Assembly: GCF_006345805.1 (NCBI RefSeq)
Contig: NC_043001.1
Location: 93,744,001-93,808,000 of the forward strand
Source: Octopus sinensis
Lineage: Eukaryota
Reading direction: 5' to 3'
DNA: 64,000 bases
This document shows positions 1,230 through 58,367 of this stretch, piece after piece. Numbering within the stretch: position 1 is the first letter of the stretch; the number at the start of each line of letters is the position of its first letter. The notes below the pieces were generated by a model, which made no database searches, was not told the origin of the DNA, and saw only the letters and a list, made by a program, of their open reading frames with translations. The position numbers and the translations under genes are program-made.

Positions 1230-1587
1230 TATATATTATATATATATATATGTATATGCATATGATATAAGTATGTGTGTATATATGCTGTGTGTTCGTG
1301 TGTAAGAATGTATGCTTTTATTTGCGTGTATGTGTATGTATACGTCTATATGCGAGTAGAACCTGGAAACGGACTGTAGAATATAATTGGTAGGTACATA
1401 TTAATGAAGTTATCAAATTCTATATCGATTGAACCAGATAATTTGAGAGCGAGAAGTGCAGAATGAAAATAGAGCGTTGTAGAGAGAAATAGAGAAAAAA
1501 AAAAACAAAAAAAAAACAAAGGGAAGTGATGGACAATAATTTAAGGGAAAGGTAAAGAAATAAAATGAAAACAAGAGAAATGCTGAA

Positions 1588-1626
<39 letters not shown>

Positions 1627-3281
1627 GTGTGTGTGGTGTGTGTGTGTGTGTGTGTGTGTGTCTGTGTCTGTGTATGTATATAGACATATTGAAATAGAGA
1701 GAGAGAGTGAGGAAGCAACGAAAGAGGTATTGAGGAACGAGAGGTTGGAATTAAAGTGAAAGAAACACTGGGGAAGGAAATAAATGGGTCAAAGATATTG
1801 AAAGTTGTGTAGATTGGGGAGGGTGGACAGTCTATATCAGTGCAAAGGATTATGTGGAGGAAAAGGTGGAGAGAAACAGAATGAAGAAGAGTTAGGAAGA
1901 AATAGAAACAAGAATGACAGTAAACGAGGAGGTAAATATGTACAGGAGTAAGAATTATCCTCCATGTGATTCAGAAATAAGAATCATGGAGAAGTAGAAA
2001 GAAATAACCCTCGTTAATAAAAACACCGAACTACATACTAGAATTAACAAGGAATATATAAAAGGAAAGAAAACCAAATGGAAAAGTAATTTGTTGGGTG
2101 AACACTGTCGAAGTAAAGAATAAATCAGAAAAATAAGGTTACGTAGTGAACTTTCAGATTGTGAAATAGAAACTTTGGTTTATTGATGTGCTTGATGCTT
2201 GAGAATAGAAACATATGAATATGCACTTATGTTTTCAATTGTTTACTAGACAGAAAGAAGCAATTTAGTCGAGGGAAGTTTATAATTTGTGAACACCAAA
2301 ACGGCATCATATATACTATTTATAAGGAGACCAAATGTAATAGAGAAAAGTACAAGTTAGTTAGGTGTACAGTTGTTTAATATGAAGGGAATGTTCTTTT
2401 TATTTCGCTACTTCGTCAAGAAATAGAAATATAAAGACACTCATACTAAGCAGATTTATATCTACTTTCCCCCTAACACTGTATATAGTACAAAGCTTTA
2501 AAATCTGTTATATATCTCAGCTCAGGTAGCCTACGTCTGTCCGTCTGATTACCTCTCTCTCTCTCTCTCTACATATGTGTATAAGTCCGGTGCCTGTATG
2601 TGTGGGTGTGTGTCTGTCTTTGTGTGTGTGTGAGGGAGAGAGTGTGTGGGTGTGAGTGTCTGTATGCGTATATAAATAGCACAGATAAAAAAGTTAGGTG
2701 GGAGTATAGATGTTTGGTCCATTTGTATACAGCTGTTTTCATAATCCCTTTTAGTTACATAATAGATATTACATCAATATTCAACCTACATAAAATATGC
2801 GTNNNNNNNNNNNNNNNNNNNNNNNNNNNNNNNNNNNNNNNNNNNNNNNNNNNNNNNNNNNNNNNNNNNNNNNNNNNNNNNNNNNNNNNNNNNNNNNNNN
2901 NNTTATGCAGCACTCAGCTGAAGGCAAATGTTTTGTGAAGAGGTCTTAGTCGATGGTGATTATACTAGCTGTGAAGAGAAATATTGATGCTGGAAATATG
3001 ATGGCGAGGATGATGAGCAGTTCAGTTGATGTGGAGTACAATGTGAACCAGTATGGTGTTTCTTAGCATAATAATGATACATATAATGAACATGGCAAAC
3101 ATGAAGACCCTACTGCTACTGATAGTAATGTGAAATTGTAATACTCAAGCATTAGGCGCAAGTAAAGCTGGACTAATTGAACAACTGTCGAGAGAGGCAG
3201 GGATAGAAGAGAGCAATAATGTGATTGCGCGTTAGAGAATGTATTGTGTGTTTAAGTTTGCTTTAACAATTCTCTCTATAC

Positions 3282-3321
<40 letters not shown>

Positions 3322-3679
3322 TATATATTATATATATATATATGTATATGCATATGATATAAGTATGTGTGTATATATGCTGTGTGTTCGTGTGTAAGAA
3401 TGTATGCTTTTATTTTGCGTGTATGTGTATGTATACGTCTATATGCGAGTAGAACCTGGAACGGACTGTAGAATATAATTGGTAGGTACATATTAATGAA
3501 GTTATCAAATTCTATATCGATTGAACAGATAATTTGAGAGCGAGAAGTGCAGAATGAAAATAGAGCGTTGTAGAGAGAAATAGAGAAAAAAAACAACACA
3601 AAAAAAAACAAAGGGAAGTGATGGACAATAATTTAAGGGAAAGGTAAAGAAATAAAATGAAAACAAGAGAAATGCTGAA

Positions 3680-3718
<39 letters not shown>

Positions 3719-4878
3719 GTGTGTGTGGTGTGTGTGTGTGTGTGTGTGTGTGTCTGTGTCTGTGTATGTATATAGACATATTGAAATAGAGAGAGAGAGT
3801 GAGGAAGCAACGAAAGAGGTATTGAGGAACGAGAGGTTGGAATTAAAGTGAAAGAAACACTGGGGAAGGAAATAAATGGGTCAAAGATATTGAAAGTTGT
3901 GTAGATTGGGGAGGGTGGACAGTCTATATCAGTGCAAAGGATTATGTGGAGGAAAAGGTGGAGAGAAACAGAATGAAGAAGAGTTAGGAAGAAATAGAAA
4001 CAAGAATGACAGTAAACGAGGAGGTAAATATGTACAGGAGTAAGAATTATCCTCCATGTGATTCAGAAATAAGAATCATGGAGAAGTAGAAAGAAATAAC
4101 CCTCGTTAATAAAAACACCGAACTACATACTAGAATTAACAAGGAATATATAAAAGGAAAGAAAACCAAAGGAAAAGTAATTTGTTGGGTGAACACTGTC
4201 GAAGTAAGAATAAATCAGAAAAATAAGGTACGTAGTGAACTTTCAGATGTGAAATAGAAACTTTGGGTATTGATGTGCTTGATGCTTGAGAATATAAACA
4301 TATGATATGCACTTATGTTTTCATTGTATTGACTAGACAGAAAGAAGCAATTTAGTCGAGGGAAGTTTATAATTTGTGAACACCAAAACGGCATATATAC
4401 TATTATAAGGAGACCAATGTAATAGAGAAAAGTACAGTTAGTTAGGTGTACAGTTGTTAATATGAAGGGAATGTTCTTTTTATTTCGCTACTTCGTCAAG
4501 AAATAGAAATATAAAGACACTCTACTAAGCAGTTATATCTACTTTCCCCCTAACACTGTATATAGTACAAAGCTTTAAAATCTGTTATATATCTCAGCTC
4601 AGGTTAGCCTACGTCTGTCCGTCTGATTACCTCTCTCCTCTCTCTCTACATAGTGTATAAGTCCGGTGCCTGTAGTGTGGGTGTGTTTGTCTGTCTTTGT
4701 GTGTGTGTGAGGGAGAGAGTGTGTGGGTGTGAGTGTCTGTATGCGTATATAAATAGCACAGATAAAAAAGTTAGGTGGGAGTATAGATGTTTGGTCCATT
4801 TGTATACAGCTGTTTCATAATCCTTTTAGTTACATAATAGATATTACATCAATATTCACACCTACATAAAATATGCGT
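812..4878. repeat. ~2 kb direct duplication (812-2802 and 2903-4878) flanking a 100-N scaffold gap; probable assembly overlap artefact
   Basis: Sequence after the gap restarts at ttatgcagcactcagctg (812) and runs to cataaaatatgcgt. Copy 2 differs mainly by 1-nt deletions. Confidence 0.9.
2803..2902. other. Assembly gap (100 N)
   Basis: Run of 100 N. Confidence 1.
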
Positions 4879-7734: not shown

Positions 7735-8060
7735 ATCATCATCATCATCATCATTTCCATTTCACGTCTCAGAGCTCTTGATTTCATTTAATTCTGTAAG
7801 AGCGGGCAACTACCTGTTGTCAAGGATCTCTTTGACAGGGTCCTTTTTCCACGATACTTAACATCGAAGTAACAATTTTGAAATTCCTCGCTATTCCCCA
7901 CTGAAGCATTATTTTTCTGAGCATGTTCTACTCACGTGTCAATCCCAATTTCTCCAATAAATGTCTCAAATCTGGTCGGTAATAATGCCGGTCGCCCTAC
8001 AACTACTGGGATGATAGTTAATTTCTTCACTGCCCACATTCGTGCAATCTCATCATCGCT
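7735..8060 (-). mobile_element. 3' end of an R4/Dong-clade (RLE-type) non-LTR retrotransposon, decayed, with a (GAT)n tail
   Basis: Minus strand translates DEIARMWAVKKLTIIPVVVG...FIGEIGID..VEHAQK, resembling the C-terminus of R4/Dong ORFs. Trinucleotide tail at 7735-7754. Confidence 0.7.
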
Positions 8061-8489
8061 GGTGCTTCTCAATCATTTCCACTCCGTTGTCCCACATTTG
8101 TACATCCCTAGGTATGTGTGTGTGTGTTGCATGCATCTATGTATGCATGTATGTATTTTTATTGTTATAATTCTTTGCAAATTCAACCTCGACATTGTTC
8201 TTTTTTGTCGGATTTATTCAATTTCAATTATTCAATTTGATCGAAAGATTTGTATAATCCTGGTTCCCGTCATCATTTTGTCAACTACGTCAATGTCTAA
8301 TCTCTGAGTATTAGTCACTGGATCACAATGGGATCGATCAGGCATCGGAAAAGGATTCTGGATTATTTTTCCCTTTTTTTTCTACTTAATTTTTGAGAGC
8401 GTTCGGGTTCATTTTTAGTATTCTCATTTGTGAGAGCAGTCAGGTTTATTTCAGATATTCACATTTTAAAAAATCCTCTCTGGCTAATC

Positions 8490-14404: not shown

Positions 14405-14545
14405 ATTGTTGTCAGAATCATCAGCACGCCGGGCATATTACTTAGCAGCATTTCATTCGTCTACGTTCAGAATTCAAATTCTGTCGAGGATAGCTTGACT
14501 TCTTACCCTTTCAGAATTGATAAAATAAGAACAAGTTGAGCACTG
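14405..14545 (+). mobile_element. tRNA-derived SINE family A, diverged
   Basis: cagaatc..agcacgccgggc...gttcagaattcaaattc..gataaaataag matches the other family A copies. Confidence 0.75.
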
Positions 14546-17944: not shown

Positions 17945-18373
17945 TTTCTACTCTAGGCATAAGGCTCGAAAGTTTGGGGGAGGGATTAGTCGATTTGATC
18001 TACCCCAGTACCCAACTGGTACTTAATTTATTGACTCCGAAAGGATGAAAGGCAAAGTCATCCACGGTGGAATTTGAAATCAGAACGTAAAAGCAGACGA
18101 AATACCGCTAACCATTTCGCCCGGCGGGCTAACGTTTCTTATTTCGTTATTGCCCACAAGGAGCTAATCATACAGGGGACAAACAAAGAGAGACAAAGTG
18201 ATTAAGTCGATTATATCGACCCCAGTGCGTAACTAGTACTTAATTTATCGACTCCGAAAGGATGAATGACAAAGTCGACCTCGGCGGAATTTGAACTCAG
18301 AACGTAGCGGCAGACGAAGTACCGCTAAGCATTTCGCCCGGCGTGTTAACGATTCTGCCAGCTCGTCGCCTTT
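17945..18373 (-). mobile_element. Two tandem tRNA-derived SINEs, family A (17945-18140, 18148-18373)
   Basis: Minus strand reads ggcgacgagctggcagaatcgttaacacgccgggcgaaatgc...gttctgagttcaaattccgccgaggtcgac. Confidence 0.9.
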
Positions 18374-20039: not shown

Positions 20040-20240
20040 CCGTCTTCTTGTTTCAGTCATTTCATTGCTGCCATACTAGGGCACCGCCTTGAAAGGTTTT
20101 AGTCGAACAAATCGACCCTAGGATTTTTTGTTTTTTAAGCCAGGTGCTTAGTCTATCTGCCCCTTCTGCCGAACTGCTATATTTCGGGGACGTAAATACA
20201 CTAACACCGGTAGTCAAGTGGTGGTGTGAGACAAACATAG
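20040..20240 (-). mobile_element. 3' half of SINE family B
   Basis: Matches the 3' half of the copies at 22055, 40025 and 57858, including the ggcggtgcccyagyatggc tail. Confidence 0.75.
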
Positions 20241-20251
20241 ACATAAAACAC

Positions 20252-20772
20252 ACGCCGGATATCATAATATGGTGTGAAAGAGAGAAAGTGGGTAATCTAG
20301 TCAAGTTAATGGTTCCTCATGAAGATAACATGGACGCCGCTCGTGCTCGAAAGATTGATCATTATGTAAACCTCCTCGAGGAATGTGAAGACGCAGGCTG
20401 AAAAGCGGAGCATTTTCCAGTCGAAGTCGTATATAGAGGATTCATTGAACATAGTGTGATGTGATTGTTGTTAACATTAGGCTTACTCATCGTAAAGAAA
20501 ATGGCACCATGAGTGATATCCAAACGACAGTGGAAACGAGTAGCCACTGGATTACATTAAAAAGAGACGATGAGCGATGGCTAGATGCATATTGAGCAAT
20601 ATCTGATAACCAATTGATCTAGGGAACGGGGCCTCATTTTAGTGAGGGCACAATGTTGCTTTCAGGAGGTCGGCTTCGAAACGCACTCTCTCCTGATGAA
20701 ACCATGCAGTCAATGGTTGCCGGTATGCGGAGTTTTCGCGTGGTAGTACTTGCACGTGCAAGTAGTTCGCAA
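20252..20772 (+). mobile_element. HERO-like (RLE-type) non-LTR retrotransposon 3' fragment with a structured 3' UTR, ending at (TA)n
   Basis: Translates TPDIIIWCEREKVGNLVKLMVPHEDNMDAARARKIDHYVNLLEECEDAG*KAEHFPVEVVYRGF...ETSSHWITLKRDDERW, resembling the HERO motif RPDIVLW..ELTVPWE..RK..Y..L..EC..GW....PVEVGCRGF..W.W.KR. Confidence 0.8.
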
Positions 20773-21554: not shown

Positions 21555-22054
21555 ATATACACACACATATACGCTTCTATATAATTATTTCTTTCTTACA
21601 CTCTGTATATCTGAAGGTGTGTGTTTTTGACTGTTTGTGTGAGTGAGTGCGCACATGCATTCGTATTACTTTTAATCACATCTTTAACGTTAACGACTAC
21701 TGTAGAACTAATTGCTATTATTTTCTCGAACCCTATCCATATTGCTGGGCAACTGTAGCTATATTTTGTACAAATTTTGACAATAGCATTCGAATAGTTT
21801 TCTTCAAATTATGATTTTGTACAGTTCTGTACATCTGTGAACATTTCTAGCTCAATACTTACCACTGCCCCTTATGCCAATTCCATGAGAAGACTATTGA
21901 CCAGAAAATTCGTATCAGGTTTGTGCTCGCTTTCAAGAAACAGCATTGAAAATGACAACTAGATTAATTTATCTATATTGGTCTCTCACCTAATGCATAG
22001 CCTCCAGTCGTTGTTTTATGGTAAAAGTGATGTACAATTTTATTGGGTCGGTAT

Positions 22055-22293
22055 TCTTTTACTTGCTTCAGCCATTTGACTGTGTCCATGCTGGAGCACC
22101 GTCTTTAGTCGAGAAAATCGACTCTAGGACTTATTCTTTGTAAGCGTAGTACTTATCCTATCGGTCTCTTTTGCCGAACCACTAAGTTACGGGGACGTTA
22201 ACACACCAGCATCGGTGGTCAAGCGATGGTGCGGGTCACAAACGCAGACACACAAAGACAGAAACACACACACATACACAAACACGCGTGCAC

Positions 22294-22335
<42 letters not shown>

Positions 22336-22500
22336 TGTGTGTGTATGACGATCTTCTTTCAGTTTCCGTCTACTAAATCCACTAACAAGACTTTAGTCGG
22401 CCCGAGGCTATAGTAAAAGACACTTGCCCAAATTTCCACGCGGTGACACTGAACCCGGAACCATGTGGCTGGGATGCAAGCTACTTACCACACTACTGCC
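22055..22500 (-). mobile_element. Full-length tRNA-derived SINE family B with an internal (CA)/(TA) tract
   Basis: Head gtggtaagtagcttgc..ggttccgggttcagtg; body gggcaagtgtctt..ctatagcctcgggccga; tail gctccagcatgg. Confidence 0.9.
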
Positions 22501-24629: not shown

Positions 24630-25247
24630 AGGTACAGACGTGGCCAAGAAGCTTGCTTAGCAGCAATAAGGTTTCGGATTCAGCCTAATTGCTTGGCACC
24701 ATGGGCAAGTGTCTTATATTGTAGCCTCAGGCCAATCAAAGTATAGTGAGTGGATTTGCTACACTGAAACTGGAAGAACCCCGTGGTATATATACATACA
24801 TACAAAGCAATTAAGCTGATGAGTACGGGACACTTTTATCTGCTGCAATTTTTGCAACTTGTAATAAAGCCTGTCTTTGTATGAAACAATTGTACTAAAA
24901 ACTAATCCATTCTTGTTGCTTCTTTCTCGTTTATACATACATACATACATATATATATATATAGATATATATATATATATATAGATATATATATATATAT
25001 ATTATATATATATATGTATATATATATATGTACATATATATATATATGTGTGGTGTGGTGTGTGTGAGCGTGCGTATGTGTCGTTGTGTCAGTTTGGTCC
25101 CCACCATCGCTTGGCAACCACTGTTAGCTTCTTATGTTCCCTCGGCAAAGGACTTCGACAGAAAAAGTTCCAGGCTTTACAATAAAAAAGGAAATAATAA
25201 TAATAATAATAATATTAATAATAATAGTAATAATATTAATAATTATG

Positions 25248-26137: not shown

Positions 26138-26464
26138 ATGAGAGCTCAAAATCTCTCGTTGGATCGTCATCCAACCAAAATGCAAATATTTGGGAAACTA
26201 CCACCTGTGTCATCTCTTGTGAAAGGTAGGAGAGTCCAGTTTGCTGGACATTGTTGTAGGACTGAAAACGAGGCAATTTCTACTCTTCTCCTCTGGAAAC
26301 CATCTACTCGCGATACCAGAGGGAGTACGCTCTCCTACCCTGATGTAATCCCCAGGGATACAGGCATCCAGCAACAGGACCTACGCAATGCTATGATGGA
26401 CCGTGAAGTCTGGCGGAGCATGGTAAATTCCATTGTCTCGACCACGGTCGAACAATGATGATGA
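26138..26464 (+). mobile_element. 5'-truncated RTE-clade LINE 3' end with a (TGA)n tail
   Basis: ORF RAQNLSLDRHPTKMQIFGKLPPVSSLVKGRRVQFAGHCCR...DLRNAMMDREVWRSMV is a typical RTE C-terminus (RRxxFAGH; AxDRxxWR). Confidence 0.85.
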
Positions 26465-27341: not shown

Positions 27342-28674
27342 CTAGAAGAGAAATCCTCAAGGCCTCAGGCCCAAGATCACCAGATCACGTGTGACCTAGT
27401 CTTGTAAATAATGGACACCCGACCGTTAGTGATATCAGCGTCATATCCCCGCCAACAGTATATAGAATAACAATGCCAGAACAGGCACTGGTGTTGCGAT
27501 TTATCAGTGAGCTTATCGGATATGATTGTTAGTATTGGATGCGATTGTTTGTATTTTATCCAAATCAAACGCAGCTTACTCGGACGAAATATGTATTTGT
27601 CCACTATGTATTTCTCTGTTAACAGAGGCTTTTTATGACATTATTTGGAAGAAAAAGAGTGGCGTTTTAAAATCCTCAGATTATTTCTACACGAGACATT
27701 TTTGCTTTCAGTCCAAAACTCTCCGGATAAGCACAGCATTAATTTCTGTCTTTCTTAAAGATCTAAAGTTTTCAGATGTCAGTCGCCTGTACTTTAAGGT
27801 TGCTAAAAGATCCCCTAGGAACAGAAATTGTTTTCGGGCAATATAGAACTATTCTCTTTGTGGCGAGCAATTTTCTTTTTCATTTTGCGAATAGTTGACT
27901 ACTTCATGACGAATATGAACATAATTGTTAATGCTTACATGAACATTCTTACTGCATATCAATAAAAACAAGCTTGACAAAACTGTTTAAGTTGCTGTTA
28001 GTGTTGTATAACGAGAGCTTTCTACTTCAACTGTAAAAGAATATTCTGATACATTCAACACAAACAAAAACATGAGAAGTATTCTCCTTGATATTTTGTT
28101 ATAAAGAACACTTCAAAAATATCCTTATCACTAATTTTCTACGCGAAAAATTTGAAAAATTTCTACCTTACGCTAGACGTTTGCTTTTATTGATAAAAAA
28201 TTAAAATTTTGAAGATTTTAAAGTTTTACTTTCTTCAAAGAACACAATATGCAACTATATAAAATGTGATAATATTTCCAAAGTGACGCTATTCAGAATG
28301 CGAAGATCGTTTGTTGCACTGCATATACCTAAAATTGAACACGTACAATAGACGAACCACTAAAAAAGGAACAAAGTAATGTTTAGGATTTTATTTTACT
28401 CAGTAGTTTAGATATATAAAGAAATATTAACACACACATATATACAAGCACGCGCACGCGACCACACACACACACTGATACAATTGTATATATACACATA
28501 AACACGTACATATACATAAACACTCAAGTGTGTGTATATATATATACACACACACATAATGCATATATGTATCCGTATGTATATAAATATATATGCGTGT
28601 ATATTAGAATTGCTGGGGGTGGGGAGAAAACACAGACACTCAAACATACACACGCACAACACCCATATATATAT

Positions 28675-28965
28675 TTCCGTCTACCTAATCCATTCACAAG
28701 GCTTTAATCGGCCGAGGCTATAGTAGTAGAAGACACCTGCCCAAGGTGCCATGCAATGGGACTCAACCTGGAACAATGTGGCTGGTAAGCAAGCTACTTT
28801 ATTTCAAAATTTTGCCATAGAGGCCCAAGATATAAGGAGTAGCTTGCGGGTTGGACAAAAACATCGATAAGGTGAGTGATCAAAAGGATGATATTGATGG
28901 GAGAACACAAAAGACGCCCTCCGAACTGCTGCTTCTCAAGCTTACCATACAGCCACTCCTGCACC
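28675..28965 (-). mobile_element. SINE family B 5' half, interrupted by a ~140 bp insert (28799-28939)
   Basis: The head is split between aagctact and aagcttaccatacagccactcctgcacct. Confidence 0.75.
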
Positions 28966-32350: not shown

Positions 32351-32558
32351 GCGAGCTGTCAGTATCGATAGCACGCCGAGAATAATGCTTAGCGACATTT
32401 CGTCCCACCTGACATTTTGAGTTCAAATTCAGCCGAGGTCGAATTTGCTTTTCATCCTTTCAAGGTCGATAAAATAAGTAGCAATTGAACACAGGGCCGA
32501 TGAAATTAGCACATCACCTCCCCAAAAACCACTACCCTTGTGGCAAAGTTTGAAACCA
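32350..32558 (+). mobile_element. SINE family A after (TTA)n
   Basis: gcgagctgtcag..agcacgccg..gagttcaaattcagccgaggtcg. Confidence 0.85.
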
Positions 32559-33457: not shown

Positions 33458-34749
33458 ATATATAAAGGCAGCCGCAATGTATGTATAATATCAATAGTAC
33501 ACATTGCCTAAAATAGTACGTAATGTTTATAAGCTGAAGGACTATTTTTCATAGTCTACACTATTAGGAGTGGTCTGGGAGTAAAGTATAAGTAGATCAG
33601 TAATATATTTTGATACTTTACTATAGGTCCTTATTTATATGAGACTAAGTGACGTTTCTCGACGAGACATTTTCCTGATATCATATGGATAGTGTGTTGG
33701 CAAAAATCTACACAATGGAACACATTTTCAGTCAAAGAAGTATCTGTTTTCCACTTAACAACTTTGACAACAAGCAAACACTCGAGTAGGAGCTTCAGAA
33801 GAAGAGCAATATTTAACAGAAAATGAATAAAATGGAAAGAGAAGAAACACAGGACAGGCGAAGAGAGAAAATTAAATAATTTCTATATAATGAAACTCTA
33901 AGCACTTGAAGAAATATTTAACTAGCAAAGAAAAGCGATACTGACAAGTAAGAAATATAAAATGAAATAAAATTAAAGACATGTATTGAGATTTCCGCAT
34001 TAGCACAAACCGAAATTGAACCGAACGAAACACAAGGCTGTTTCCTACTTTTTATGCTGTTAGAACTGGAGTATTTGAAAGCGATTCTTTGATAATTAGA
34101 TTGCATCAACTACAAAGGACATAATATAAAGACACCGGTTATTTAATGAGACGTTGCTCGCCTCGAAGGCGCCGTATAATAGCAGTTATTGTAGTTAAAT
34201 AAACCGAATAAATGCTCTTCAAATTGATATTATTAATGTTTCTGTGGTGATATAGCATGTTGCAAGAGATAAATTCACGAAACGGTTTCGATTCACATTT
34301 AAACAAAAAAGTTGCAAATATGATCATAATTTAATTTTCAGCCACATTAACACAAGCAACAATACCTCTTAAATAAACCATTGCAATAAGCTCATCTATG
34401 CTTACACATGACGCGTAAAAATAAATGGAATCAATGTCGGTTTGAACACTGTGTGTTCCAATCGGTGATCAAATTAGATGTATATTTATAAAATTATAGT
34501 GTAAAGGGATGAATACTCCGCAGAGACTTGAATCACACGATGCTCTTTCAGTAATTTCTTTTTCCATCTACCCAAATTCACTCACGAAGCTTGCGTTGAC
34601 AGAATGAGTTACTGTCATGGGCATATTACTCATCTTCTCGTCTCCAACACCAGAGAAAATATCATTATACGTGCTAATGAATGGATGTGTTTGTAATCAA
34701 TCAGAATTAATTTGTGTTAATCTACACAACAGCAACAACAAAAATAATA

Positions 34750-35050
34750 TTGTTCAATATTTTAGAGATGAGGAATTATGTACAACATTTACATTGGACG
34801 GTAGGTGTCCTCAGCTTGTTTGTTACCACAGCATTTTGGCTGATTTGCTCTCCAGCCTTCATCAGGTATCCTGGTGGAATTTCGAACCCAAACCTCGTTT
34901 GCCTACTGTTCTCATTCTTAAGGTAGTTTTTACTGATGTTATTCCTAAGGTAGTTTTACTGATGTTATTAGTATTTATTGAAGTCACTGACGAGGATTGA
35001 ACCCGGAATCCTGGGGTTAGCAGCCCGCGCTTTTAACCACTATGTTATAC
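34750..35050 (-). mobile_element. tRNA-headed SINE (family D) carrying a degenerate hammerhead motif
   Basis: Head tagtggttaaaagcgcgggctgctaaccccaggattccgggttcaatcc, then CTGATGA a ggctg gagagcaaat cagcc AAAA tgct gtgg (34865-34826). Confidence 0.7.
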
Positions 35051-35189: not shown

Positions 35190-35331
35190 CTCGAACCAAA
35201 TGCACTCACAAGGCTTTGGTCGACCCAAGGCTATAGTAGAAGAACCTCCCCAAGGTGCCACGCAGTGGGAATGAAGCCGGAACCATGTGGTTGGTAAGCA
35301 ATCTACTTACCACATAACCATTCCTGCGCTT
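35190..35331 (-). mobile_element. SINE family B 5' half
   Basis: Matches the head and body of the copy at 40025. Confidence 0.85.
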
Positions 35332-35750
35332 ATATTGTATGCATACATTTGAAAACCTAGTATCTGCGATGCAATATTTTATAGGAAACAATACAAGAAC
35401 AAAATACTTCACACTCGAAAGCAGTTAATATTAATATGGTTTATTATAACTAAATAGCGAGATACTCTAGCACGTATCTTATAGAGAATCTCAAAAACGA
35501 ATGAACATCATATTAATCAATGTAATTAGATCGACCGTGGTTATTTAAAGATTTCGTGCTTATAATGAATGCAGCTTGCACGCTTAACCTTTTGTAAGAG
35601 AAAATGTCACAAATGTAAATGACAACACTCTGTTCAGAAATAGTAGGCAAAAGGTGAAATAACCAGAAACAATGTAACATTCATATGTTGCAAATGGTTA
35701 ATATATGTGGGTGTTGAATGTATATAATGGATTGTTACATTGAATAACAG

Positions 35751-35825: not shown

Positions 35826-36773
35826 GTGAGTGCTTACTGCAATACATTCATTTAATGGTTGAAGTGTCTTTCCGTTAGCCTCACCAAAAGAGCATTAGGA
35901 TAGCCTGATATTTCCATTACATGTTATATTCAGTTATTGTGTGATAGTGATGGTGAATGTCGGACTAGATTATATCTATCTATAGAGCACGTCAACTGCG
36001 ATACGGCTTATATATATTTTATGTCACATTCACTGAACGATAGAGTCATTGATTACACATTTAACAAAGGATCAATAAAAGAGTTTAATGTATTTTCTGT
36101 TGCGAGAATTGCAAGCGAAAGTCTCTGAAACATGAGTGGGGCAAATACATCGAAATATATTTGTGCAGCGTTGCCTCGCCGAGGATTATATACACACGTA
36201 TTCACAAACGCCTTCACACACATGTATATACACATAAACTCTCACACTGCATACTTCCGCAGTTCTACTCTAAAAGTGTTGGTCAACTTGCGGTCATTGT
36301 TCTATAGCTGAAACCACATGCTTAAAGTGTTTTGCAAGGTATTTGGACCCAGAATTCTACGGCTCAGATTCCAAATTTGTTAACCATTCATGTTTCCTTT
36401 CCAATTGCAAGCGTTTAACATTATAAAGAGAAACATTGAGAATGAAGACATTCTATTCTATAGTAAAAATGTTTGTAGATACACATTCAATTGCCGTAGA
36501 TATTTTAAAATATGTATGTCTCATAGCGTTAGGACGTCTGTAGTTAGGATCGGCCCTTATAATATTAAAAGATCTAACTTTGCCAACTAACTGAAATGTC
36601 ATATAATAGTTACGAATGCACTATGAACTATAATAGCTTCGAAACACTTGTTCAACTTTATAGTTTTCAGTTAATGTTATATAAAGACAAATTATACGCA
36701 GAGCCGTGAAAAAAGTTCAGGTATATATATATATATATATATGCATGTATGTATATATGAATTAGGTACTTAC

Positions 36774-36846
36774 CATATCATGCGTATTTTAGAAATAGGA
36801 CGAAACAGTGAAGACACTTACCTGAAAAAGAATAAAAGAAAAAAAT
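36774..36846 (-). other. Candidate recursive splice site (ratchet point) with a 48-nt cryptic RS-exon (36821-36774)
   Basis: Minus strand reads tttttttcttttattctttttCAG|GTAAGT...gatatg|GTAAGT. The exon has stop codons in all three frames. Confidence 0.6.
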
Positions 36847-37589
36847 AATGAATAAATTTTAAGAACAAAACATTTCGAAATATTAAAGCATAAATGAACT
36901 AAAAAAGAATAAAATATAAAATTTACTAAACACCATTGGTATAAATGGTTAAATAATTTTATCGACTGCTATTGCATACTTTTAATAAGTTAAACGATAA
37001 ATTAAGGGGGCGGTCGAAGCTGAATACTGAAGCTTTTACCAACATCTTTCTTCTTTGTTTGTCACATGTGACAGTAACTGTATTCTTATAGATGAAATTA
37101 CTGTTGAAAAGAATAACAGCTTATCAAAATGATGAAAACAATAATATTAGGGCTGATAAAAATCAATCATAGAAAGACCAACATCGATGACGGCGATCCG
37201 ATTAGTAGAAAAATTATATGAATGTAATGTGACAATTATGATGATGATGATGGCGGTGGTGGTGGTGGTGATGATGATGATAATGATTATGATGATGCCG
37301 ACCACGACGATGGCGATTATAGTTTTGGCTAATTTTTGCTTAAGGACAGTGATTTGACAGGAATGGGGAAAGACGATTGCAATGAACCCATTATTGGATT
37401 GCTACTTTGTTTTATCGACCCCTAAAAGGAAGGAAATAAATGTTCATCTTGGCGGTATTTTGTACTCGGGTTGTAAAAAGCCGGCAGAAATGCACTAAAC
37501 ATTTTGTTCGACGCGCTGTCGATTCTGACAAGTCGTTGCCAAACCAAAAACAGCATTGGTTTCAAATTTTTGCAGAGGGCCAGCATGTT

Positions 37590-37768
37590 CAGGAGAGAGG
37601 AGCGGGGCCTAGTCCGATACATTGACCCTACAACTCAACTGGTGCTTATTTTATCAACCTCGAAATGCAAAGTCGACCTCAGTTTAATTTGAACTTAGAA
37701 CATAAAGACGACTGTAATGCTGTTAAACATGCTCCCAGTGTGTTAACGATCCTACCAGTTCGCCAAAT
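37590..37768 (-). mobile_element. Diverged SINE family A
   Basis: aaagtcgacctc..aatttgaactt..ttaacgat..ccagttcgcc. Confidence 0.7.
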
Positions 37769-38094
37769 AATAAAAATAGAAATAATGACGTTCGATATAC
37801 GTTCGATACGATCCAGAACTGTTTGATTTAAAAAAAAAAGGAAAATAATCGTTACTTCTAGTGCTGTGTTTCTTCTCCATGACTCAAATAGTTCTAATAT
37901 ATTTACGTACATAACATTATCACGCAGAATTATTCAACTTAGCTTCAATATAAATGAAGTGTGCAACAGCAAGACTATCACCATTATTACTCAGCATCAT
38001 ATTTTAGATAAAATAAAAAGAACTTGTATCATACTCTACAGAGAAACGATAGCCAAAATGCATTACTCCTCGCTCTATTCTACCTCTGCTACAC

Positions 38095-38190: not shown

Positions 38191-38419
38191 TATATATAAC
38201 ATGCATACATACTTATATACTTTTAACATTACTGTTTTCAGTCCAAGGATGAGGCCATCTTGGGGCATGTGTTTCTATCTCTCAATTTCTTAGAGTATCT
38301 GTCTATTTCTCTCTATCTCTCTCTTTAGCTTTCGCCCTATCTGTGTCTCTCACCAATACAACACACGAGCGCACACATGCATATATATTCATAGAGAGAT
38401 GCATGCATTCTTGTTTCTT

Positions 38420-38826
38420 TACTGCCCACAATGGGCTACATACAGAGGAGACAAACAGTGACAGACAAACGGATTAAGTCGATTACATCGACCCCAGTGC
38501 GTAAGTGGTACTTACTTAATCGACCCCGAAAAAATGAAAGACTAAGTCGACCTCGGCGGAATTTAAACTCAGAACGTAGCGGCCGACAAAATACCTATTT
38601 CTTTACTACCCACAAGGGGATAAACATAGAGTAGACAAACAAGTACAGACAAAGGAATTAAGTCGACTATATTGACCCAAGTGCGTAACTGGTATTTATT
38701 TAATCGACCCCCGGATGATGAAAGGCAAAGTTGACGTCGGCGGAATTTGAACTCAGAACGTAGCGGCAGACGAAACACCGCTCAGCATTTCGCCCGGCGT
38801 GCTAACTATTCTGCCAGTTCGCCGCC
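38420..38826 (-). mobile_element. Two tandem SINE family A copies
   Basis: Repeated gattaagtcga..ccccagtgcg..ggcggaatttgaactcagaacgtagcgg, ending at ctgccagttcgccgcc. Confidence 0.9.
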
Positions 38827-39309
38827 TGTCTTCGGGGTTGCAACAATGTGTACATGTGGTGTATGGAAGTTTTGCTGCCTGTGCTCGCAACATTCACACG
38901 CGTTGTGGGCTAACGACTGCCTGAATGAAACAGCATTCATAAATGTGATTATTCTGGAGGAATATACGCGTGATTCTGCGCCTGTGTAAGTATAGATGGT
39001 AATAAACTGACAGGAAATGGGAGATAGATTGATAGATAGAGTACTGTATGAGAGAAAGAGACAGAAGCTGTCAAAATAGTGTCAGTGGATGTGTAGATAT
39101 GTAGCAAGAAAATGCAGTAAGAGAATGTTTATTGTTTGTTTGAAAGGGAAACAGCAATCAGTTGGTGATTTTCTCAACACAATTACTAAAATACGACATG
39201 AATAAAACAGATAAACAACAATGCAGTGGTGGTGGTGGGGAAGGTAAGAGGAAACCAAGAGAAAATAGAAACACCAATAATGATGTCTCTGAAAATAACC
39301 TAAAGAAAA

Positions 39310-39324: not shown

Positions 39325-39366
<42 letters not shown>

Positions 39367-39720
39367 CATCGTCATTATCATCATCAGCAGCATCACTGCC
39401 ATCAACATCATTAGCAGCATGTGTGTGGGAGGAGGCGGTGGTAATATACGAACGTCGATGACGATGGCGGAGATGATGGTGACGCTGAGGATGATGATGA
39501 TGATGATGACGACGACGGTGATGCGACGAAGAAGACGACGACGAAGAGGACGATGACAACGACGATGATCCTGATGATAAGGATGATGAGGATGGTGGTG
39601 GTCATGTATGCAGGTGATGCTTATTTCACATCAGAATACAACTAATTACATTTCCTTGGTAACGACATGACAAAAAAAAAAGGCGGCAACAACGATGGCG
39701 ATGAAGGTGATGATAACGAA
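39310..39720. repeat. (CAT)n/(GAT)n/(GAC)n compound trinucleotide repeat
   Basis: Direct inspection. Confidence 0.9.
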
Positions 39721-40024: not shown

Positions 40025-40435
40025 AGGCGTAGGAGTGGCTGCGTGGTAAGTAGCTTGCTTACCAGCCACATGGTTCCGAGTTCAGTCCCACTGCGTGGCA
40101 CCTTAGGCAAGTGTCTTCTACTATAGCCTCCGGCCGACCAAGGCCTTGTGACTGGATATGGTAGATGGAAACTGAAAGAAGCCCGTCGTATACATGTATA
40201 TATATATATATGTGTGTGTGTGTCTGTATGTTTGTGTGTCTATGCCTGTCCCCCGAACATCGCTTGACAACCGATGCTGTCGTGTTTACATCCCTGCAAC
40301 TTAGCGGTCCGGCAAGAGAGACTGATAGATTTAAGTACTAGTCTTACAAAAAATAAGTCCTGGGGTCGATTTGCACGACTAAAGGCGGTGCTCCAGCATG
40401 GCAACAGTCACATGACTGAAACAAGTAAAAAGAAT
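40025..40435 (+). mobile_element. Full-length SINE family B
   Basis: aggcgtaggagtggctgcgtggtaagtagcttgc..ggttccgagttcagtcc..; tail ggcggtgctccagcatggcaacagtc..gactgaaacaag. Confidence 0.92.
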
Positions 40436-40744
40436 CATAGAGTAAAAGATTACCCAACATACGGTCCGTGCAAAAAAGAGCGATATGCTTGTCATAAATT
40501 TTCCAGGAATTTTTTTCATCCCAGATTACATACGCAAATTCACAGGTAAAATATGTATTTGAAATAAATATATAAATAAATAAATTCATGAATGGATGTT
40601 GTTTTCCCAGCGATAATGCTCTTCTCTGTGCACGAGTCGTTCCGGTTAACACGATTTTTTCCACTTCCTGTAGGGATGTAAGCCTGGTATCATTTTCAAA
40701 TAGGTTTCAGTACCTTTTTTTAAAATCATTTCTAGAGTATTATC

Positions 40745-40798
<54 letters not shown>

Positions 40799-40800
<2 letters not shown>

Positions 40801-40887
40801 CTACCGAGCGCAGCTCTGTGTGCCTTGGGTATGTGCTGTGATTTGTTGTGATGCTCTGATGGTTATTGTATGGAAAGTGTTCTGCGT
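40799..40887 (-). mobile_element. ~90 bp 3' stub of an R4/Dong-like element embedded in (TAA)n on both sides
   Basis: Minus strand reads (L)RRTLSIQ* plus a short 3' UTR and (TAA)n. Confidence 0.65.
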
Positions 40888-40907
40888 ATTATTATTATTA
40901 TTATTAC

Positions 40908-40961
<54 letters not shown>

Positions 40962-40962
<1 letters not shown>

Positions 40963-41200
40963 ATCAGGAGGAGCGACACAAATTTGAATATGGCATACAT
41001 TGGATATTATTAAGTTGATGAGATGATACTATAATCATGGATGACATGAACCAAGGAAACATTGAAGTAGAGAATTGACAGCAGGTAATCAAATTTTAGG
41101 TGAAGTGACATTAGGAGAGGAATCATCCGGTGTGACAGTGTATCCTCATTGATCGGTGTATCCTCAGTGATCATTGACCATTGTGACAGTGTATCCAAGT
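40962..41200 (+). mobile_element. R4/Dong-clade reverse transcriptase remnant
   Basis: Fragments NLNMAYIGYY / ELTAGNQILGEV / IRRGIIRCDSVSSL resemble NLxMAWIDY..GEVxIRRGIFQGDSLSPL. Confidence 0.7.
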
Positions 41201-42317
41201 TGTTCATTTTAAAGAAGGCTTTCAATAGCTATTGAATGCGTCCTTTAAAAGAGTCAAGAATAGTCTGATGTGAACAATAATTGAAAACAATGAATACAAA
41301 AATATATTGGGAAAATATGGTAATAATCACAGAAAATTTACCATAATAGTTTCTAAAAGAAAAGAAACTAGAACACAGACAGAATGATGGTTACTGTAGG
41401 ACAGGATAAATGCCATTCCAAATGAAGCCACAAAAAACAAGCCATAAGCTTGGATACATTAGCAGCTGCACAATATATGGAGATCGAGAATAAACAATTA
41501 ACAAATTGACATTTGCAACCCTGTTTTTACAGTATATGACATTAATACACTGGGACTTAGGCCAGTATAGGGAAAGGACAGGAAAAGAGAGGTGCTATAC
41601 TATACACTACTAAAAAAGATCTTTGGTGGCGATAGAAACGGTGATACTGGTGATGAAGTTTGTAATGATTATGATACTGATGATAAAACGAGTATAATAA
41701 CGGCATAAAATGTATTGATGCGAAGATGAGGTATTATTAAAAGGAAGCATTTTGATTCATCATACAAATTTTCTCTATAACAAATGTCAAAAAATTTAAA
41801 ATCAACATTATTTCAAACAGCCCTAGTTCAGTCATCAACAAGAGATAAGGATGGCCCCAATCCTTGTGTAATGGATAACGTTGTAGCTCTAGCTCGTGAT
41901 GAATATGCGAGCGATAAGGAAGTTTGATATATTAAAAAAGAAAGATTATGATATTGAAGAGAAAGCTATATCAACTAAATGATATTGTAGTAATAAATTA
42001 TTGCGTACGCTGTAAGGCATTTTTTGTTATATGGTTGCAACAATTTTATATTCTGGATGCAACTGTAGCAAATGTTGGTGTTTTCATAATGGATTATACG
42101 CATACAGAAAAGGTGTGTAGACACGGACAAAACGGCGATACACATTTATAGATATTTACATTCACAAAAGCTAACATACACACACACACAGATACGCACA
42201 ACACATTCACTCAGTCGTACACGCGTACATATATAAGTATATGTAAATATATTACTATAAATACATATATATATATATATTAGATATATATATATATATA
42301 TATAATATATATATATA

Positions 42318-42379
42318 AATGGCGGTGCCCCAGCATGGCCACAGCTCGTGAGCTGAAACTAGATAAAATAAAAGTAAAA

Positions 42380-42380
<1 letters not shown>
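42318..42380 (+). mobile_element. 3' tail stub of a CR1-like LINE or SINE inside (TA)n
   Basis: ggcggtgccccagcatggccacagctc..gctgaaactagataaaat, the same motif as at 61633. Confidence 0.65.
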
Positions 42381-42422
<42 letters not shown>

Positions 42423-42424
<2 letters not shown>

Positions 42425-42467
42425 GGATATATGTATGTATGTATATATATATAATATATGGATATAT

Positions 42468-42514
<47 letters not shown>

Positions 42515-42571
42515 GGATATATGTATGTATGTATATATATATATATATATATGGATATATGAATGTATATG

Positions 42572-42605
<34 letters not shown>

Positions 42606-42638
42606 ATATGGATATATGTATGTGTATATATATATATA

Positions 42639-42677
<39 letters not shown>

Positions 42678-42688
42678 ATATATGAATG

Positions 42689-42743
<55 letters not shown>

Positions 42744-42760
42744 ATATATGTATATATACA
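42423..42760. repeat. Higher-order (TA)n minisatellite with a repeated atggatatatg unit
   Basis: atggatatatg(t/a) recurs about 7 times within (TA)n. Confidence 0.8.
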
Positions 42761-43314
42761 TACACTCAGTTATATAAATATATACAAGAAGGATTTTTTC
42801 ATATTGACTCATAACAGTTGATCCACGTTGTCCCTTTAATGGCGCTGGCACAAGTGGTAAAAGCGTTCAGCCTTTCGTCTTTTGACAAACCATCAAAGGA
42901 AACCTTCATATTTATCACCATCCAGCGGTTAAAAACCCTCTCGCTTAACTTGGTCAGTCATCTTTTTTCTGCAAGTCTTCTCACTATATTTTTCTTTGAA
43001 GTATTTAATAGCTTCGGCAGCAGAAGAATCAATATGATACCTTTATCGTGTGTATATATAAAACACAAACAAACAAACACACACACACGCACACACAAGG
43101 AAACGTATGCAGATGTTTATATATATATATATGTATGGATATGTGTGTGTGTGTGCGTATGTAGATGTGTGTATAGTTTTATACATGCATGAAAAATGAT
43201 GATTCCTTAAAAAATCTTGAGATTCTAAAAAAGACATGAAGTACATGCTAGTTTCATCACGTAAAAAAATCGCGATTAATCATGTTGAAATCATACTCTA
43301 ATAACATAATGTGT

Positions 43315-43895
<581 letters not shown>

Positions 43896-53354: not shown

Positions 53355-53546
53355 TTTTCTACTCTAGGCACAAGGCCAGGACCTTTGGGGGATGGGGACC
53401 AGTCTGTTAGATCGACTCCAGTACGCAACTGGTACTTAATTTATCGACCCTAAAGGATGAAAGGCAAAGTTGACCTCGGCGGAATTTGAACTCAGAACGT
53501 AGAGACAGACGAAATACCGCTAAGCATTTCGTCCGGCGTGCTAATG
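53355..53546 (-). mobile_element. SINE family A
   Basis: ggcggaatttgaactcagaacgtag..gaaataccgctaagcatttcg. Confidence 0.88.
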
Positions 53547-53670
53547 AGAGAGAGAGAGGGGGTGAGAGGGATACCCTTGGCTTGGCTTCAGGGTGAAGGT
53601 TTGATATGGGACACCTAATCACCACAGTAGAAGCTGGATGAGGAGGTAGACCCATCAGGAATAGTTAACA

Positions 53671-54329: not shown

Positions 54330-54513
54330 AACGTCATGGGGGCAGGGGTTAGTCTGTCACATCAACCCAGTGCGCATGTGTTACTTACTTTATCGAATCG
54401 GCGAGAATAAAAAGTAAAGTCGACCTCGGATAAATTTGAACTCAGAATGTGAAAGTGGACGAATTGCCGCTATGCATTTTGCCCAGCGTGCTAACGATTA
54501 TGCCAGCTCGACG
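54330..54513 (-). mobile_element. Diverged SINE family A
   Basis: aaagtcgacctcgg..aatttgaactcagaa..gcgtgctaacgatt.tgccagctcg. Confidence 0.8.
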
Positions 54514-54620
54514 ACTTTCCGTTACACTATATTAATAGCATTCAGTTCTGTTGACATTACAGCGCGTTCCCCTTTCACTTACGACTCTACGAAAACATTC
54601 GATACAACTCATATATGTGT

Positions 54621-56341: not shown

Positions 56342-57857
56342 TGTGTGTGTGTGTGTGTGTATCTCTATGTGTATGTGTGTGTATATATGGTGTATACAGT
56401 GATGTACAATGTATTATTGTCCAATCCCAGCAGATGATAAACAAAAACTAATCAGGTTTCTTTACTCACCTTTTAATGTGTTTGCATGTTGCGATACATT
56501 GAATTAGAATATTACATGCTAAGGTCTGTTTACCTTTAATCATATATTTTCTTTTTGTCTTTTTATTTATTTTTGATTCTTATCTTTCACTTTCTGTTTT
56601 GTGAATTATTGCCTATCATTCCTACCACTACAACTGCTCCCTTATATTTTTTTGAAATAGAGTTTGTTTGGCTCTCATATCTTTATTATTTATGATTCCT
56701 TTGTAATGAAGTCTATTCTTTTCTATCAGGAAATATATATTAAGAAAATCTTTCACAAACCTAGATAAACAAAAGTTTATTGACTGAACGTGATTAAGAA
56801 GCGAATAACTTCCCACTAAATAATTTAGCAAATGGATGATATCAATAAATGAACAAAATACAGCAACTTATGCCGAAGCAACGAGAAATTATATTTAAAG
56901 ATTATATTTGCCTGCCAAATCATTGGCACTCTGAATATTCTTAATAAGAGTGCACTTAGGTTCTCACATACCATTTAAGACTTAATATTCCTGAACAAGG
57001 TTGAAACTATGCATGATATATGAGTAGCATAAAACACACAGGAACGTAGGCAATGCATTAATTTCTGAGTTCAAATCTGCAGCTGTCGAAATTATCATTC
57101 AACAAGAAGTGATCAATAAATTAAGGAGAACTCAATCGAATCTAACCTCTCCTTTCTAAATTGGTAGACTGATCGATCGTACAAAATGAATGGATGTACC
57201 GACGTTTTGTTATCAGTAGTAAAATCAAGTATACACAAAGATTAATTTTAAGGGTTTCCATGTAGTTTTATTTGTGAATAACCAGATGTTTTGTGATTAC
57301 ATAGCAGCCTGTTACTTAGTGAGTCTGAATATAAAACCTTGCAATTTGCTTCAGGTGTATACAAAAACAAAACAATTCCAATTCTAAAATAAATAATCAA
57401 TAATTCTGAGAGAAAGTGTATAAACATTCGAAGGAAGGTAAGTGACAGGATTAAAAGCATCAAGCTGGAAAGGAATGGCAGAATAAACTATATTTTCAAT
57501 TTCATCATAGGTTTCATCTTTAATAGAAAAATAACAAAGGGCGTACATTTAAAATATAATGTAATACTGGGCAATATACACCCATTGCAGTGCGTCTAGT
57601 ATGTCAGCCGTTCGTGGTTTGAATTTCGATAACAAGGCATAAAGGATAGGACGGTTTCAAAGTTGACAGATATTTCAGGTTGTTACAATACATGCAACTT
57701 CTCAGATAGACGCTGTTGGCAAAAATAATGGGGAAGTAAAGACAGTCGTATCAAGAATGTGGCATGTTAATCTGAGGAACCTCCAGAAGATGCAGAACAA
57801 AGAAGTTATATTCCTGCCGCTCTCCTCGCATATATATATATATATATATATATACAC

Positions 57858-58070
57858 TCTTTAATCTTTTACTCGTTTCAGTAATTTGACTGTGGCCATG
57901 CTGGAGCACCGCTTCTAGTCGATCAAGCAAATAGACCCTGGGACATATTCTTTGTAAGCATATTACTTATTCTATCGATCTCTTTTGCCGAACCGCTATG
58001 TTACGGGGGCGTAAACACGCCAGCATCGGCTATCAAGCGATGTTTTTGGGACAAACACAGACACACACAT

Positions 58071-58102
<32 letters not shown>

Positions 58103-58285
58103 GCATATATTTACATATATACGACAGGCTTCTTTCAGTTTCCGTCTACCAAATCCACTCACAAGACTTTGGTCGGCCCGAGGCTATAGTAGAAGACACT
58201 TGCCCAAGGTGACACGCAGTGGAACCGAACCCGGAACCATGTGGATGGTAAGGAAGCAACTTACCACACAGCCACTCCTACGCTT
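57858..58285 (-). mobile_element. Full-length SINE family B
   Basis: Collinear with the copies at 22055 and 40025. Confidence 0.92.
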
Positions 58286-58294
58286 ATACACATA

Positions 58295-58367
<73 letters not shown>

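What the first reader, a model, noticed from the sequence alone, without database searches (positions are those of the whole stretch)
36768..36846. Candidate recursive splice site with a 48-nt all-frame poison RS-exon (minus strand)
Seen in sequence: a 22-nt near-pure pyrimidine tract, then CAG immediately followed by a perfect GTAAGT donor. Exactly 48 nt downstream is a second donor, ATG|GTAAGT. The intervening exon has stops in all three frames (g TAA; ..ttc TAA; ..gca TGA). Established: Drosophila ratchet points and vertebrate RS sites have this juxtaposed 3'ss-5'ss form, followed by a short cryptic, often PTC-containing exon that provides exon definition. Inference: the window lies in a very long intron of a minus-strand gene that is removed stepwise. 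I am not aware of recursive splicing being characterised in cephalopods, which have long introns and large neuronal genes.
Basis: partly seen in the sequence, partly recalled or inferred. Interest (0 to 1): 0.8.

Follow-up and report, generated by a model that had tools for sequence, protein, structure and literature searches.

The report
Candidate recursive splice site, unverified
On the minus strand there is a near-perfect "acceptor fused to donor" splice signal followed 48 bases later by a second perfect donor, which chance rarely produces and which matches known recursive splice sites, but no tool here could show that the region is transcribed, lies in an intron, or is conserved.

Summary
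On the minus strand, a 21-nt pyrimidine tract with one A is followed by CAG|GTAAGT. After a 48-nt segment with stops in all three frames comes ATG|GTAAGT.

The 9-mer CAGGTAAGT alone is not significant: 25 of 100 shuffles contain one. The composite is significant:
- The AG is the best-scoring acceptor of 6393 in the window, and its GT ranks third of 7398 donors.
- As a combined acceptor-donor site it scores 0.93; the next best of 325 AGGT sites scores 0.75.
- No site reached 0.93 in 4000 simulated windows.
- A conservative empirical estimate for the whole arrangement is about 1.3e-4 per window.

The site lies in unique DNA, not in a repeat. The anatomy matches Drosophila ratchet points and vertebrate recursive sites with a cryptic ~50-nt exon.

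Three things remain untested:
- **Host gene:** no exon was found anywhere in the window, so a long intron and intergenic DNA are both possible. Strand asymmetry only weakly favours the minus strand as sense.
- **Conservation:** no related locus could be retrieved.
- **Taxon:** cephalopod origin could not be verified.

Verdict: a good sequence-only candidate, about 0.5 likely to be a functional recursive-type splice element. It would be a new member of a known kind.

The parts
36849..36853 (-). Candidate branch-point adenosines, at -28 (36849, context TTCAT) and -32 (36853, context TTTAT) from the acceptor AG
   Evidence: Read. Both fit yUnAy. There is no AG for 77 nt upstream of the acceptor. 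This is inference only: such matches are common in AT-rich DNA.
36825..36845 (-). Polypyrimidine tract, 21 nt, 20 pyrimidines and one A
   Evidence: 19/20 Y at -22..-3. It is part of the top-ranked acceptor of 6393 AG sites in the window.
36822..36824 (-). 3' splice site CAG (the recursive acceptor)
   Evidence: Acceptor PWM score 16.6 bits, rank 1 of 6393.
36816..36821 (-). GTAAGT directly after the AG: the 5' splice site that would be regenerated after the first splicing step
   Evidence: Donor PWM rank 3 of 7398. Combined acceptor-donor normalised score 0.931, against 0.752 for the next best of 325 AGGT sites.
36774..36821 (-). 48-nt putative cryptic recursive-splicing exon, with stop codons in all three frames
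   Evidence: Unique sequence, with no copy elsewhere in the window and no similarity to the local SINEs.
36768..36773 (-). Downstream 5' splice site, ATG|GTAAGT, which could define the 48-nt exon
   Evidence: Donor PWM 9.8 bits, rank 39 of 7398. The probability of a GTAAGT 25-120 nt downstream by chance is 0.026.

Best explanation
The site is a functional recursive-type splice element on the minus strand: a ratchet point, or 'zero-length exon', with a cryptic 48-nt exon.

Proposed mechanism (all steps inferred, none shown):
1. U2AF/U2 recognise the long pyrimidine tract and CAG at 36845-36822. Candidate branch points lie at -28 and -32.
2. U1 binds the donor at 36773-36768. Together these define the 48-nt segment as an exon.
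3. An upstream exon, beyond coordinate 64000, is spliced to 36821, removing the first part of a very long intron.
4. The junction regenerates a 5' splice site (exon end + GTAAGT at 36821-36816). This is then spliced to the next acceptor downstream, beyond coordinate 1, discarding the 48 nt.
5. If the 36773 donor is used instead, the 48 nt is included and introduces a stop in whichever frame is being read, so the transcript would be a target for nonsense-mediated decay.
For: - **Anatomy:** it has the published architecture, (y)nNCAG|GTAAGT plus a cryptic exon of about 50 nt and a downstream donor (PMC8605326; PMC2773006). This was read directly.
- **Outlier status:** the acceptor ranks 1 of 6393 and the donor 3 of 7398, at the same junction. 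The combined site scores 0.931, against 0.752 for the next best. No site reached 0.93 in 4000 Markov-simulated windows. The simulated background at >=0.80 is 0.155 per window, which agrees with the published antisense-strand background of about 0.1 per 100 kb per strand.
- **Whole composite:** about 1.3e-4 per window.
- **Origin:** unique sequence, not derived from a transposable element.
- **AG-free zone:** 77 nt upstream of the acceptor.
- **Setting:** no exon anywhere in 64 kb, as expected inside a very long intron.
- **Strand:** a weak excess of T-runs (21:7, p=0.013; 19:7, p=0.029 once the duplicated segment is counted once), of Y-tracts (72:41) and of T over A on the minus strand.
- **Published base rates:** in every invertebrate tested, such sites are 4-22 times commoner on the sense strand of introns >50 kb than on the antisense strand. 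In those species, a strong motif in a sense-strand long intron is usually real.
Against: - There is no evidence of any transcript, gene or strand. The window may be intergenic, or the site may be antisense to a gene.
- There are no conservation data.
- The taxon is unverified. No mollusc was in the published enrichment survey. In vertebrates, whose long introns are rich in SINEs and LINEs like this window, such motifs are barely enriched (1.0-1.5 times), and real sites are very rare (19-20 in mouse brain).
- About 5-10 equally good composites are expected by chance per 2.7-Gb genome (my extrapolation). The number of windows scanned before this one was flagged is unknown.
- The downstream donor is as strong as the regenerated one, which in flies favours exon inclusion rather than clean recursion.
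- It is the only such site in 64 kb. Fly long introns average about 2.2 per 100 kb.
Confidence: 0.5

Rival explanations
1. It is a chance match. An AT-rich, T-tract-rich non-coding region happens to place CAG|GTAAGT after a T-run, with another GTAAGT nearby, and nothing is spliced there.
For: - The 9-mer core alone occurs in 25% of shuffles.
- GTAAGT is common, with 36 copies in the window.
- The local GC content is 25%.
- 16% of 48-mers have stops in all three frames.
- No gene, transcript or conservation evidence was obtainable.
- An expectation of about 1.3e-4 per window still means several such sites per large genome. The feature definitions were also chosen after the site was seen.
Against: Three independent strong features coincide: the rank-1 acceptor, a rank-3 donor at the same junction, and a perfect donor 48 nt downstream on the same strand. 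None of 4000 simulated windows reached its score.
Confidence: 0.3
2. It is an ordinary expressed exon: a 48-nt non-coding (5'UTR or lncRNA) or regulated poison cassette exon with strong splice sites, whose first six bases happen to be GTAAGT. It would be included in stable RNA rather than serving to subdivide an intron.
For: - A strong acceptor and a strong donor 48 nt apart are what exon definition needs.
- The downstream donor is as strong as the regenerated one. In flies and mice this goes with inclusion, giving 'expressed RS-exons' or 'RS-like cryptic exons'.
- Stops in all frames fit a non-coding or poison exon.
Against: A perfect GTAAGT at the first six exon bases is expected in only about 3e-4 of exons (window-wide hexamer frequency). 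The segment is AT-rich (35% GC by my own count) and shows no sign of coding or conserved content. No other exon of such a transcript is visible in the window.
Confidence: 0.15
3. It is an intronic U1 snRNP binding cluster: two perfect 5' splice site sequences 48 nt apart, acting in suppression of premature polyadenylation or as a decoy, without splicing at the AG.
For: Two GGTAAGT 7-mers lie on one strand within 54 nt. Only 11 such 7-mers exist in the window.
Against: This does not explain the exceptional pyrimidine tract and AG abutting the first donor. No discrete sites of this kind are known to be required.
Confidence: 0.05

Closest known systems
Drosophila intronic ratchet points (RP-sites; Hatton 1998, Burnette 2005, Duff 2015, Joseph and Lai 2018/2021)
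   Same: Both have the consensus (y)nNCAG|GTAAGT, an unusually long pyrimidine tract, a short cryptic exon of about 50 nt with a downstream donor, poorly coding exon content with stops, and a setting without nearby exons.
   Different: Fly ratchet points are defined by junction reads, sawtooth coverage and deep conservation; none of these is available here. In flies the ratchet-point donor is usually the stronger of the two, whereas here the two are about equal. Fly long introns lack SINEs and LINEs, and this window is full of them.
Vertebrate recursive splice sites with RS-exons (Sibley 2015; Blazquez 2018; mouse brain survey PMC8797253)
   Same: Both show an AGGTAAGT core complementary to U1, a pyrimidine-rich 20 nt upstream, exon definition through a downstream 5' splice site, and a stop-containing RS-exon. 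The genomic setting is also similar: very long, repeat-rich non-coding DNA.
   Different: Vertebrate sites are few (19-20 in mouse brain) and lie in the first or second intron of genes longer than 294 kb. They are highly conserved. Gene identity and conservation are unknown here.
'Zero-length exon' / pseudo-exon of rat tropomyosin (Grellscheid and Smith 2006, as summarised in PMC2773006)
   Same: In both, a 5' splice site directly follows a 3' splice site inside an intron, and inclusion of the associated pseudo-exon would lead to nonsense-mediated decay.
   Different: According to its authors, that case probably does not serve to subdivide a long intron. Which of the two roles applies here cannot be told.
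Poison / decoy exons
   Same: Both are short exon-like units with strong splice sites and premature stops in every frame.
   Different: Poison exons are defined by regulated inclusion and are often ultraconserved, and they need no donor at their 5' end. Neither inclusion nor conservation could be tested here.

Membership tests
Intronic recursive splice site (ratchet point with cryptic RS-exon) | [quoted passage not shown] | tested here: met
   Normalised combined score 0.931, the only site >=0.8 among 325 AGGT sites. Acceptor rank 1 and donor rank 3.
Intronic recursive splice site (ratchet point with cryptic RS-exon) | A downstream 5' splice site that defines a short (about 50 nt) RS-exon | tested here: met
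   ATG|GTAAGT lies 48 nt downstream. The chance probability is 0.026.
Intronic recursive splice site (ratchet point with cryptic RS-exon) | Lies in a long intron (tens of kb) of a gene transcribed from the same strand | tested here: inconclusive
   No exon was found on either strand in 64 kb, which fits an intron of more than 64 kb or intergenic DNA. Weak asymmetry favours the minus strand as sense. No annotation was available.
Intronic recursive splice site (ratchet point with cryptic RS-exon) | Splicing intermediates: junction reads from the upstream exon to the site, sawtooth coverage in nascent RNA, lariat reads | not testable with these tools
   No RNA-seq or transcript resource for this genome is reachable.
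Intronic recursive splice site (ratchet point with cryptic RS-exon) | Evolutionary conservation of the AG|GT core while the RS-exon body diverges | not testable with these tools
   All attempts to reach the same locus elsewhere failed: exact look-up of 10 nearby ORFs, homology search with the 130-aa ORF 1.8 kb away, and an exact 29-mer scan of JGI metagenome contigs.
Intronic recursive splice site (ratchet point with cryptic RS-exon) | The regenerated 5' splice site outcompetes the RS-exon donor, so that the exon is skipped | tested here: inconclusive
   Both donors are GTAAGT. The strength of the regenerated site depends on the unknown upstream exon end. The downstream site has G at -1 and A at +7.
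Poison cassette exon | A premature stop on inclusion | tested here: met
   Stops in all three frames, though 16% of random 48-mers show this.
Poison cassette exon | Regulated inclusion in mature mRNA, stabilised when NMD is blocked | not testable with these tools
   No expression data are available.

The most novel reading that the evidence does not exclude
If the window is from a cephalopod, which is unverified, this would be a first sequence-level example of fly-type ratchet-point splicing with a cryptic poison exon in a lophotrochozoan. The genome's long introns are repeat-rich like those of vertebrates. That would suggest recursive splicing is an ancestral bilaterian way of handling very long introns, rather than an insect speciality that appears only sporadically in vertebrates.
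Probability: 0.4. Interest if true: 0.55.

Novelty: new member of a known kind. Interest (0 to 1): 0.4.

Why it matters
Recursive splicing has been characterised in flies and vertebrates. Motif enrichment alone has inferred it in other insects and in sea urchin (PMC2773006). A full-text search found no paper that studies recursive splicing in cephalopods.

Animals with very large neuronal genes and long introns are where the mechanism should matter most. A validated site would give a concrete locus for testing several things: whether such genomes use ratchet points, whether cryptic poison exons are a liability there, and whether the mechanism is ancestral.

On its own, however, one motif without expression data is only a lead.

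Tried and rejected
1. **Repeat origin.** Self-BLAST of the region and of the whole window found no second copy. Local alignment to the two SINE families matched only the neighbouring microsatellite. A shared 10-mer (AAGTGTCTTC) with SINE family B is coincidence.
2. **U1 snRNA pseudogene in antisense.** Rejected by reading the sequence: ACTTACCTG is followed by AAAAAG, not the U1 body. The Rfam gathering scan of the window found nothing, and there are no tRNAs.
3. **Host-gene exons.** I tried six-frame ORFs, amino-acid composition ranking, a PWM-based exon scan and Pfam on the ten best ORFs. Nothing was convincing.
4. **Promoter or CpG island upstream.** CpG observed/expected is about 0.86 over the whole window and mostly 0.8-1.3 in 1-kb windows, with no island.
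5. **Conservation through ORF look-ups.** The exact look-up of 10 ORFs found none in the collection. The 130-aa ORF at 34608-34997 had no homologues.
6. **Exact 29-mer in JGI metagenome contigs.** 0 hits.
7. **Taxon identification.**
   - The LINE-tail ORF at 26138-26455 hits only unnamed ENA metagenome contigs, best 87%.
   - Among representatives it has 4245 relatives. Of the ten hits whose clusters I looked up, the only named ones are Branchiostoma belcheri proteins at about 50% identity.
   - The ORF at 20093-20398 had no hits.
   - SINE sequence strings were not found in the paper library.
8. **SINE orientation as a strand indicator.** Family A is mostly minus-sense and family B is balanced, so it is uninformative.

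Full report
**Observation.** Reading the minus strand confirms the finding base for base.
- The T-rich pyrimidine tract is 36845-36825, 21 nt with one A at 36833.
- CAG is 36824-36822 and GTAAGT is 36821-36816.
- The 48-nt segment is 36821-36774.
- ATG|GTAAGT follows, with its GTAAGT at 36773-36768.
- The three reading frames of the 48-mer each contain a stop.
- No AG occurs for 77 nt upstream of the acceptor.
- Adenosines at -28 (TTCAT) and -32 (TTTAT) fit a loose branch-point consensus. This is my reading, and it means little in AT-rich DNA.

**Is it more than chance?** The core 9-mer is not. It occurs once, and 25 of 100 dinucleotide shuffles contain at least one. 'Stops in all frames' is also weak evidence, because 16% of random 48-mers in the window show it.

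The combination is another matter.
- Of eight AGGTRAGT sites in the window, only this one has a pyrimidine tract, 19/20.
- With simple splice-site weight matrices, the AG is the best acceptor of 6393 in the window and its GT is the third-best donor of 7398. The second donor ranks 39th.
- As a combined acceptor-donor site, in the style of Burnette and Shepard, it scores 0.931. The next best of 325 AGGT sites scores 0.752.
- I simulated 4000 window-equivalents from a 4th-order Markov model trained on the window. Sites scoring >=0.80 occurred 0.155 times per window. This closely matches the published antisense-strand background of about 0.1 per 100 kb per strand (PMC2773006). Sites scoring >=0.90 occurred 5e-4 times per window, and none reached 0.93.
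- A more conservative estimate uses the real frequency of pyrimidine-tract acceptors and local composition. It gives 0.005 per window for the junction and 0.026 for a second GTAAGT 25-120 nt downstream, so about 1.3e-4 for the whole arrangement.

Extrapolated to a 2.7-Gb genome, that still allows 5-10 chance instances. This figure is my own inference. I do not know how many windows were read before this one was flagged.

**Surroundings.** The site lies in unique sequence, with no other copy in the window and no similarity to the local SINEs beyond an adjacent microsatellite. The window is 33% GC and full of (TA)n, (CA)n and trinucleotide repeats. It carries two SINE families with tRNA-like heads and a LINE tail ORF.

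I found no convincing protein-coding exon on either strand. The searches covered long ORFs, composition ranking, Pfam on the ten best ORFs and a splice-site-bounded exon scan. There are no Rfam families, no tRNAs and no CpG island. The 64 kb is therefore either the inside of an intron longer than the window or intergenic DNA.

The only hint about strand is compositional. Runs of eight or more T are three times commoner on the minus strand than on the plus strand (21:7, p=0.013). The ratio is 19:7 (p=0.029) once a duplicated segment is counted once. Pyrimidine tracts are 72:41, and T exceeds A on the minus strand by about 2%. An excess of T and of acceptor-like motifs on the sense strand of long introns is reported for many animals (Table 4 of PMC2773006). 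This points weakly to the minus strand as the sense strand. SINE orientation is uninformative.

**What could not be tested.**
- *Conservation and transcription.* Ten ORFs from the window, including ones next to the site, are absent from the protein collection. The 130-aa ORF 1.8 kb away has no homologues. An exact 29-mer from the site is absent from JGI metagenome contigs.
- *Taxon.* The LINE tail matches only unnamed ENA metagenome contigs, up to 87% identity. Among ten of the more distant relatives that I looked up, the only named ones are amphioxus proteins at about 50%. A second transposon-like ORF had no hits. My own recollection that the two SINE families resemble octopus SINEs is memory only.

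**Mechanism.** The anatomy is that of a ratchet point with a cryptic RS-exon. [quoted passage not shown]

I therefore propose exon definition across the 48 nt, then splicing of an upstream exon to 36821, then use of the regenerated GTAAGT to remove the 48 nt and the rest of the intron. Use of the 36773 donor instead would include a stop-containing exon and trigger decay of the transcript. Every step is inferred. Because both donors are perfect hexamers, I cannot predict which one wins.

**How likely is it?** Published base rates frame the answer. In introns >50 kb, such motifs are 4-22 times commoner on the sense than on the antisense strand in four insects and a sea urchin. In eight vertebrates the ratio is only 1.0-1.5, and real sites in mouse brain number about 20. 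No mollusc has been examined, and no paper in the library addresses recursive splicing in cephalopods.

If the source genome behaves like the invertebrates and the site is in a sense-strand intron, it is very probably real. If it behaves like vertebrates, or the window is intergenic, it is probably chance. Weighing this against the very low chance probability of the full composite and the complete lack of direct evidence, I put the probabilities as follows:
- functional recursive-type element: 0.5
- pure chance: 0.3
- ordinary expressed non-coding or poison exon that happens to start with GTAAGT: 0.15
- U1-binding or decoy role without use of the AG: 0.05

**Novelty.** If real, this is a new member of a known kind, and of interest mainly for the lineage. 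It is a lead worth one look at an annotation and a total-RNA data set, not a discovery yet.

Noticed in passing
window 812-2800 and 2903-4876, N run 2803-2902: A 2-kb segment is repeated in tandem at 98.2% identity directly across a 100-N assembly gap. It looks like an unmerged overlap or haplotype at a scaffold join rather than a biological duplication.
   Followed up: partly
window 17981-18371, 37440-37800, 38408-38827, 53355-53547, 54366-54518 (minus-sense); 14410-14545, 32352-32487 (plus-sense): SINE family A has a tRNA-like head (box A/B-like motifs) and often occurs as tandem dimers, for example the 184-nt period at 38414-38779. One copy lies about 600 nt upstream of the candidate site on the same strand.
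   Followed up: partly
window 22052-22493, 28674-28799, 35195-35334, 57800-58350 (minus-sense); 24651-24793, 40027-40430, 43310-43491 (plus-sense): SINE family B also has a tRNA-like head and is regularly flanked by (CA)n/(TA)n microsatellites. Its sense strand carries GGTAAG-type donor-like motifs, which account for several of the strong 'donors'.
   Followed up: partly
window 26138-26455 (+): This is the C-terminal tail of a LINE ORF2-like protein. It has 4245 relatives among protein representatives. The closest (up to 87%) are found only in unnamed ENA metagenome assemblies, which must contain host DNA of a related animal.
   Followed up: yes
whole window: There is strand asymmetry in homopolymers and tracts. 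On the plus strand, A8+ runs number 21 against 7 T8+ runs. Purine tracts number 72 against 41 pyrimidine tracts. The AT skew is +0.023 after masking simple repeats. This is compatible with transcription of the minus strand but is not proof.
   Followed up: partly
whole window: CpG observed/expected is about 0.86 overall and close to 1 in most 1-kb windows. There is no sign of germline CpG depletion and no CpG island.
   Followed up: no
window 39326-39594, 40738-40964, 42229-42762, 43459-43664: Long trinucleotide arrays, (ATC)n/(GAT)n and (TAT)n, and dinucleotide (AT)n arrays of up to about 380 nt lie within 3-7 kb of the site.
   Followed up: no
window 20093-20398 (+) and 7935-8072 (-): These short ORFs remind me of retroelement proteins (the motifs '...LMVPHEDNMDAARARK...' and '...IIPVVVG...'), from memory only. 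Pfam found nothing for either ORF, and the homology search, run only on 20093-20398, found nothing.
   Followed up: partly
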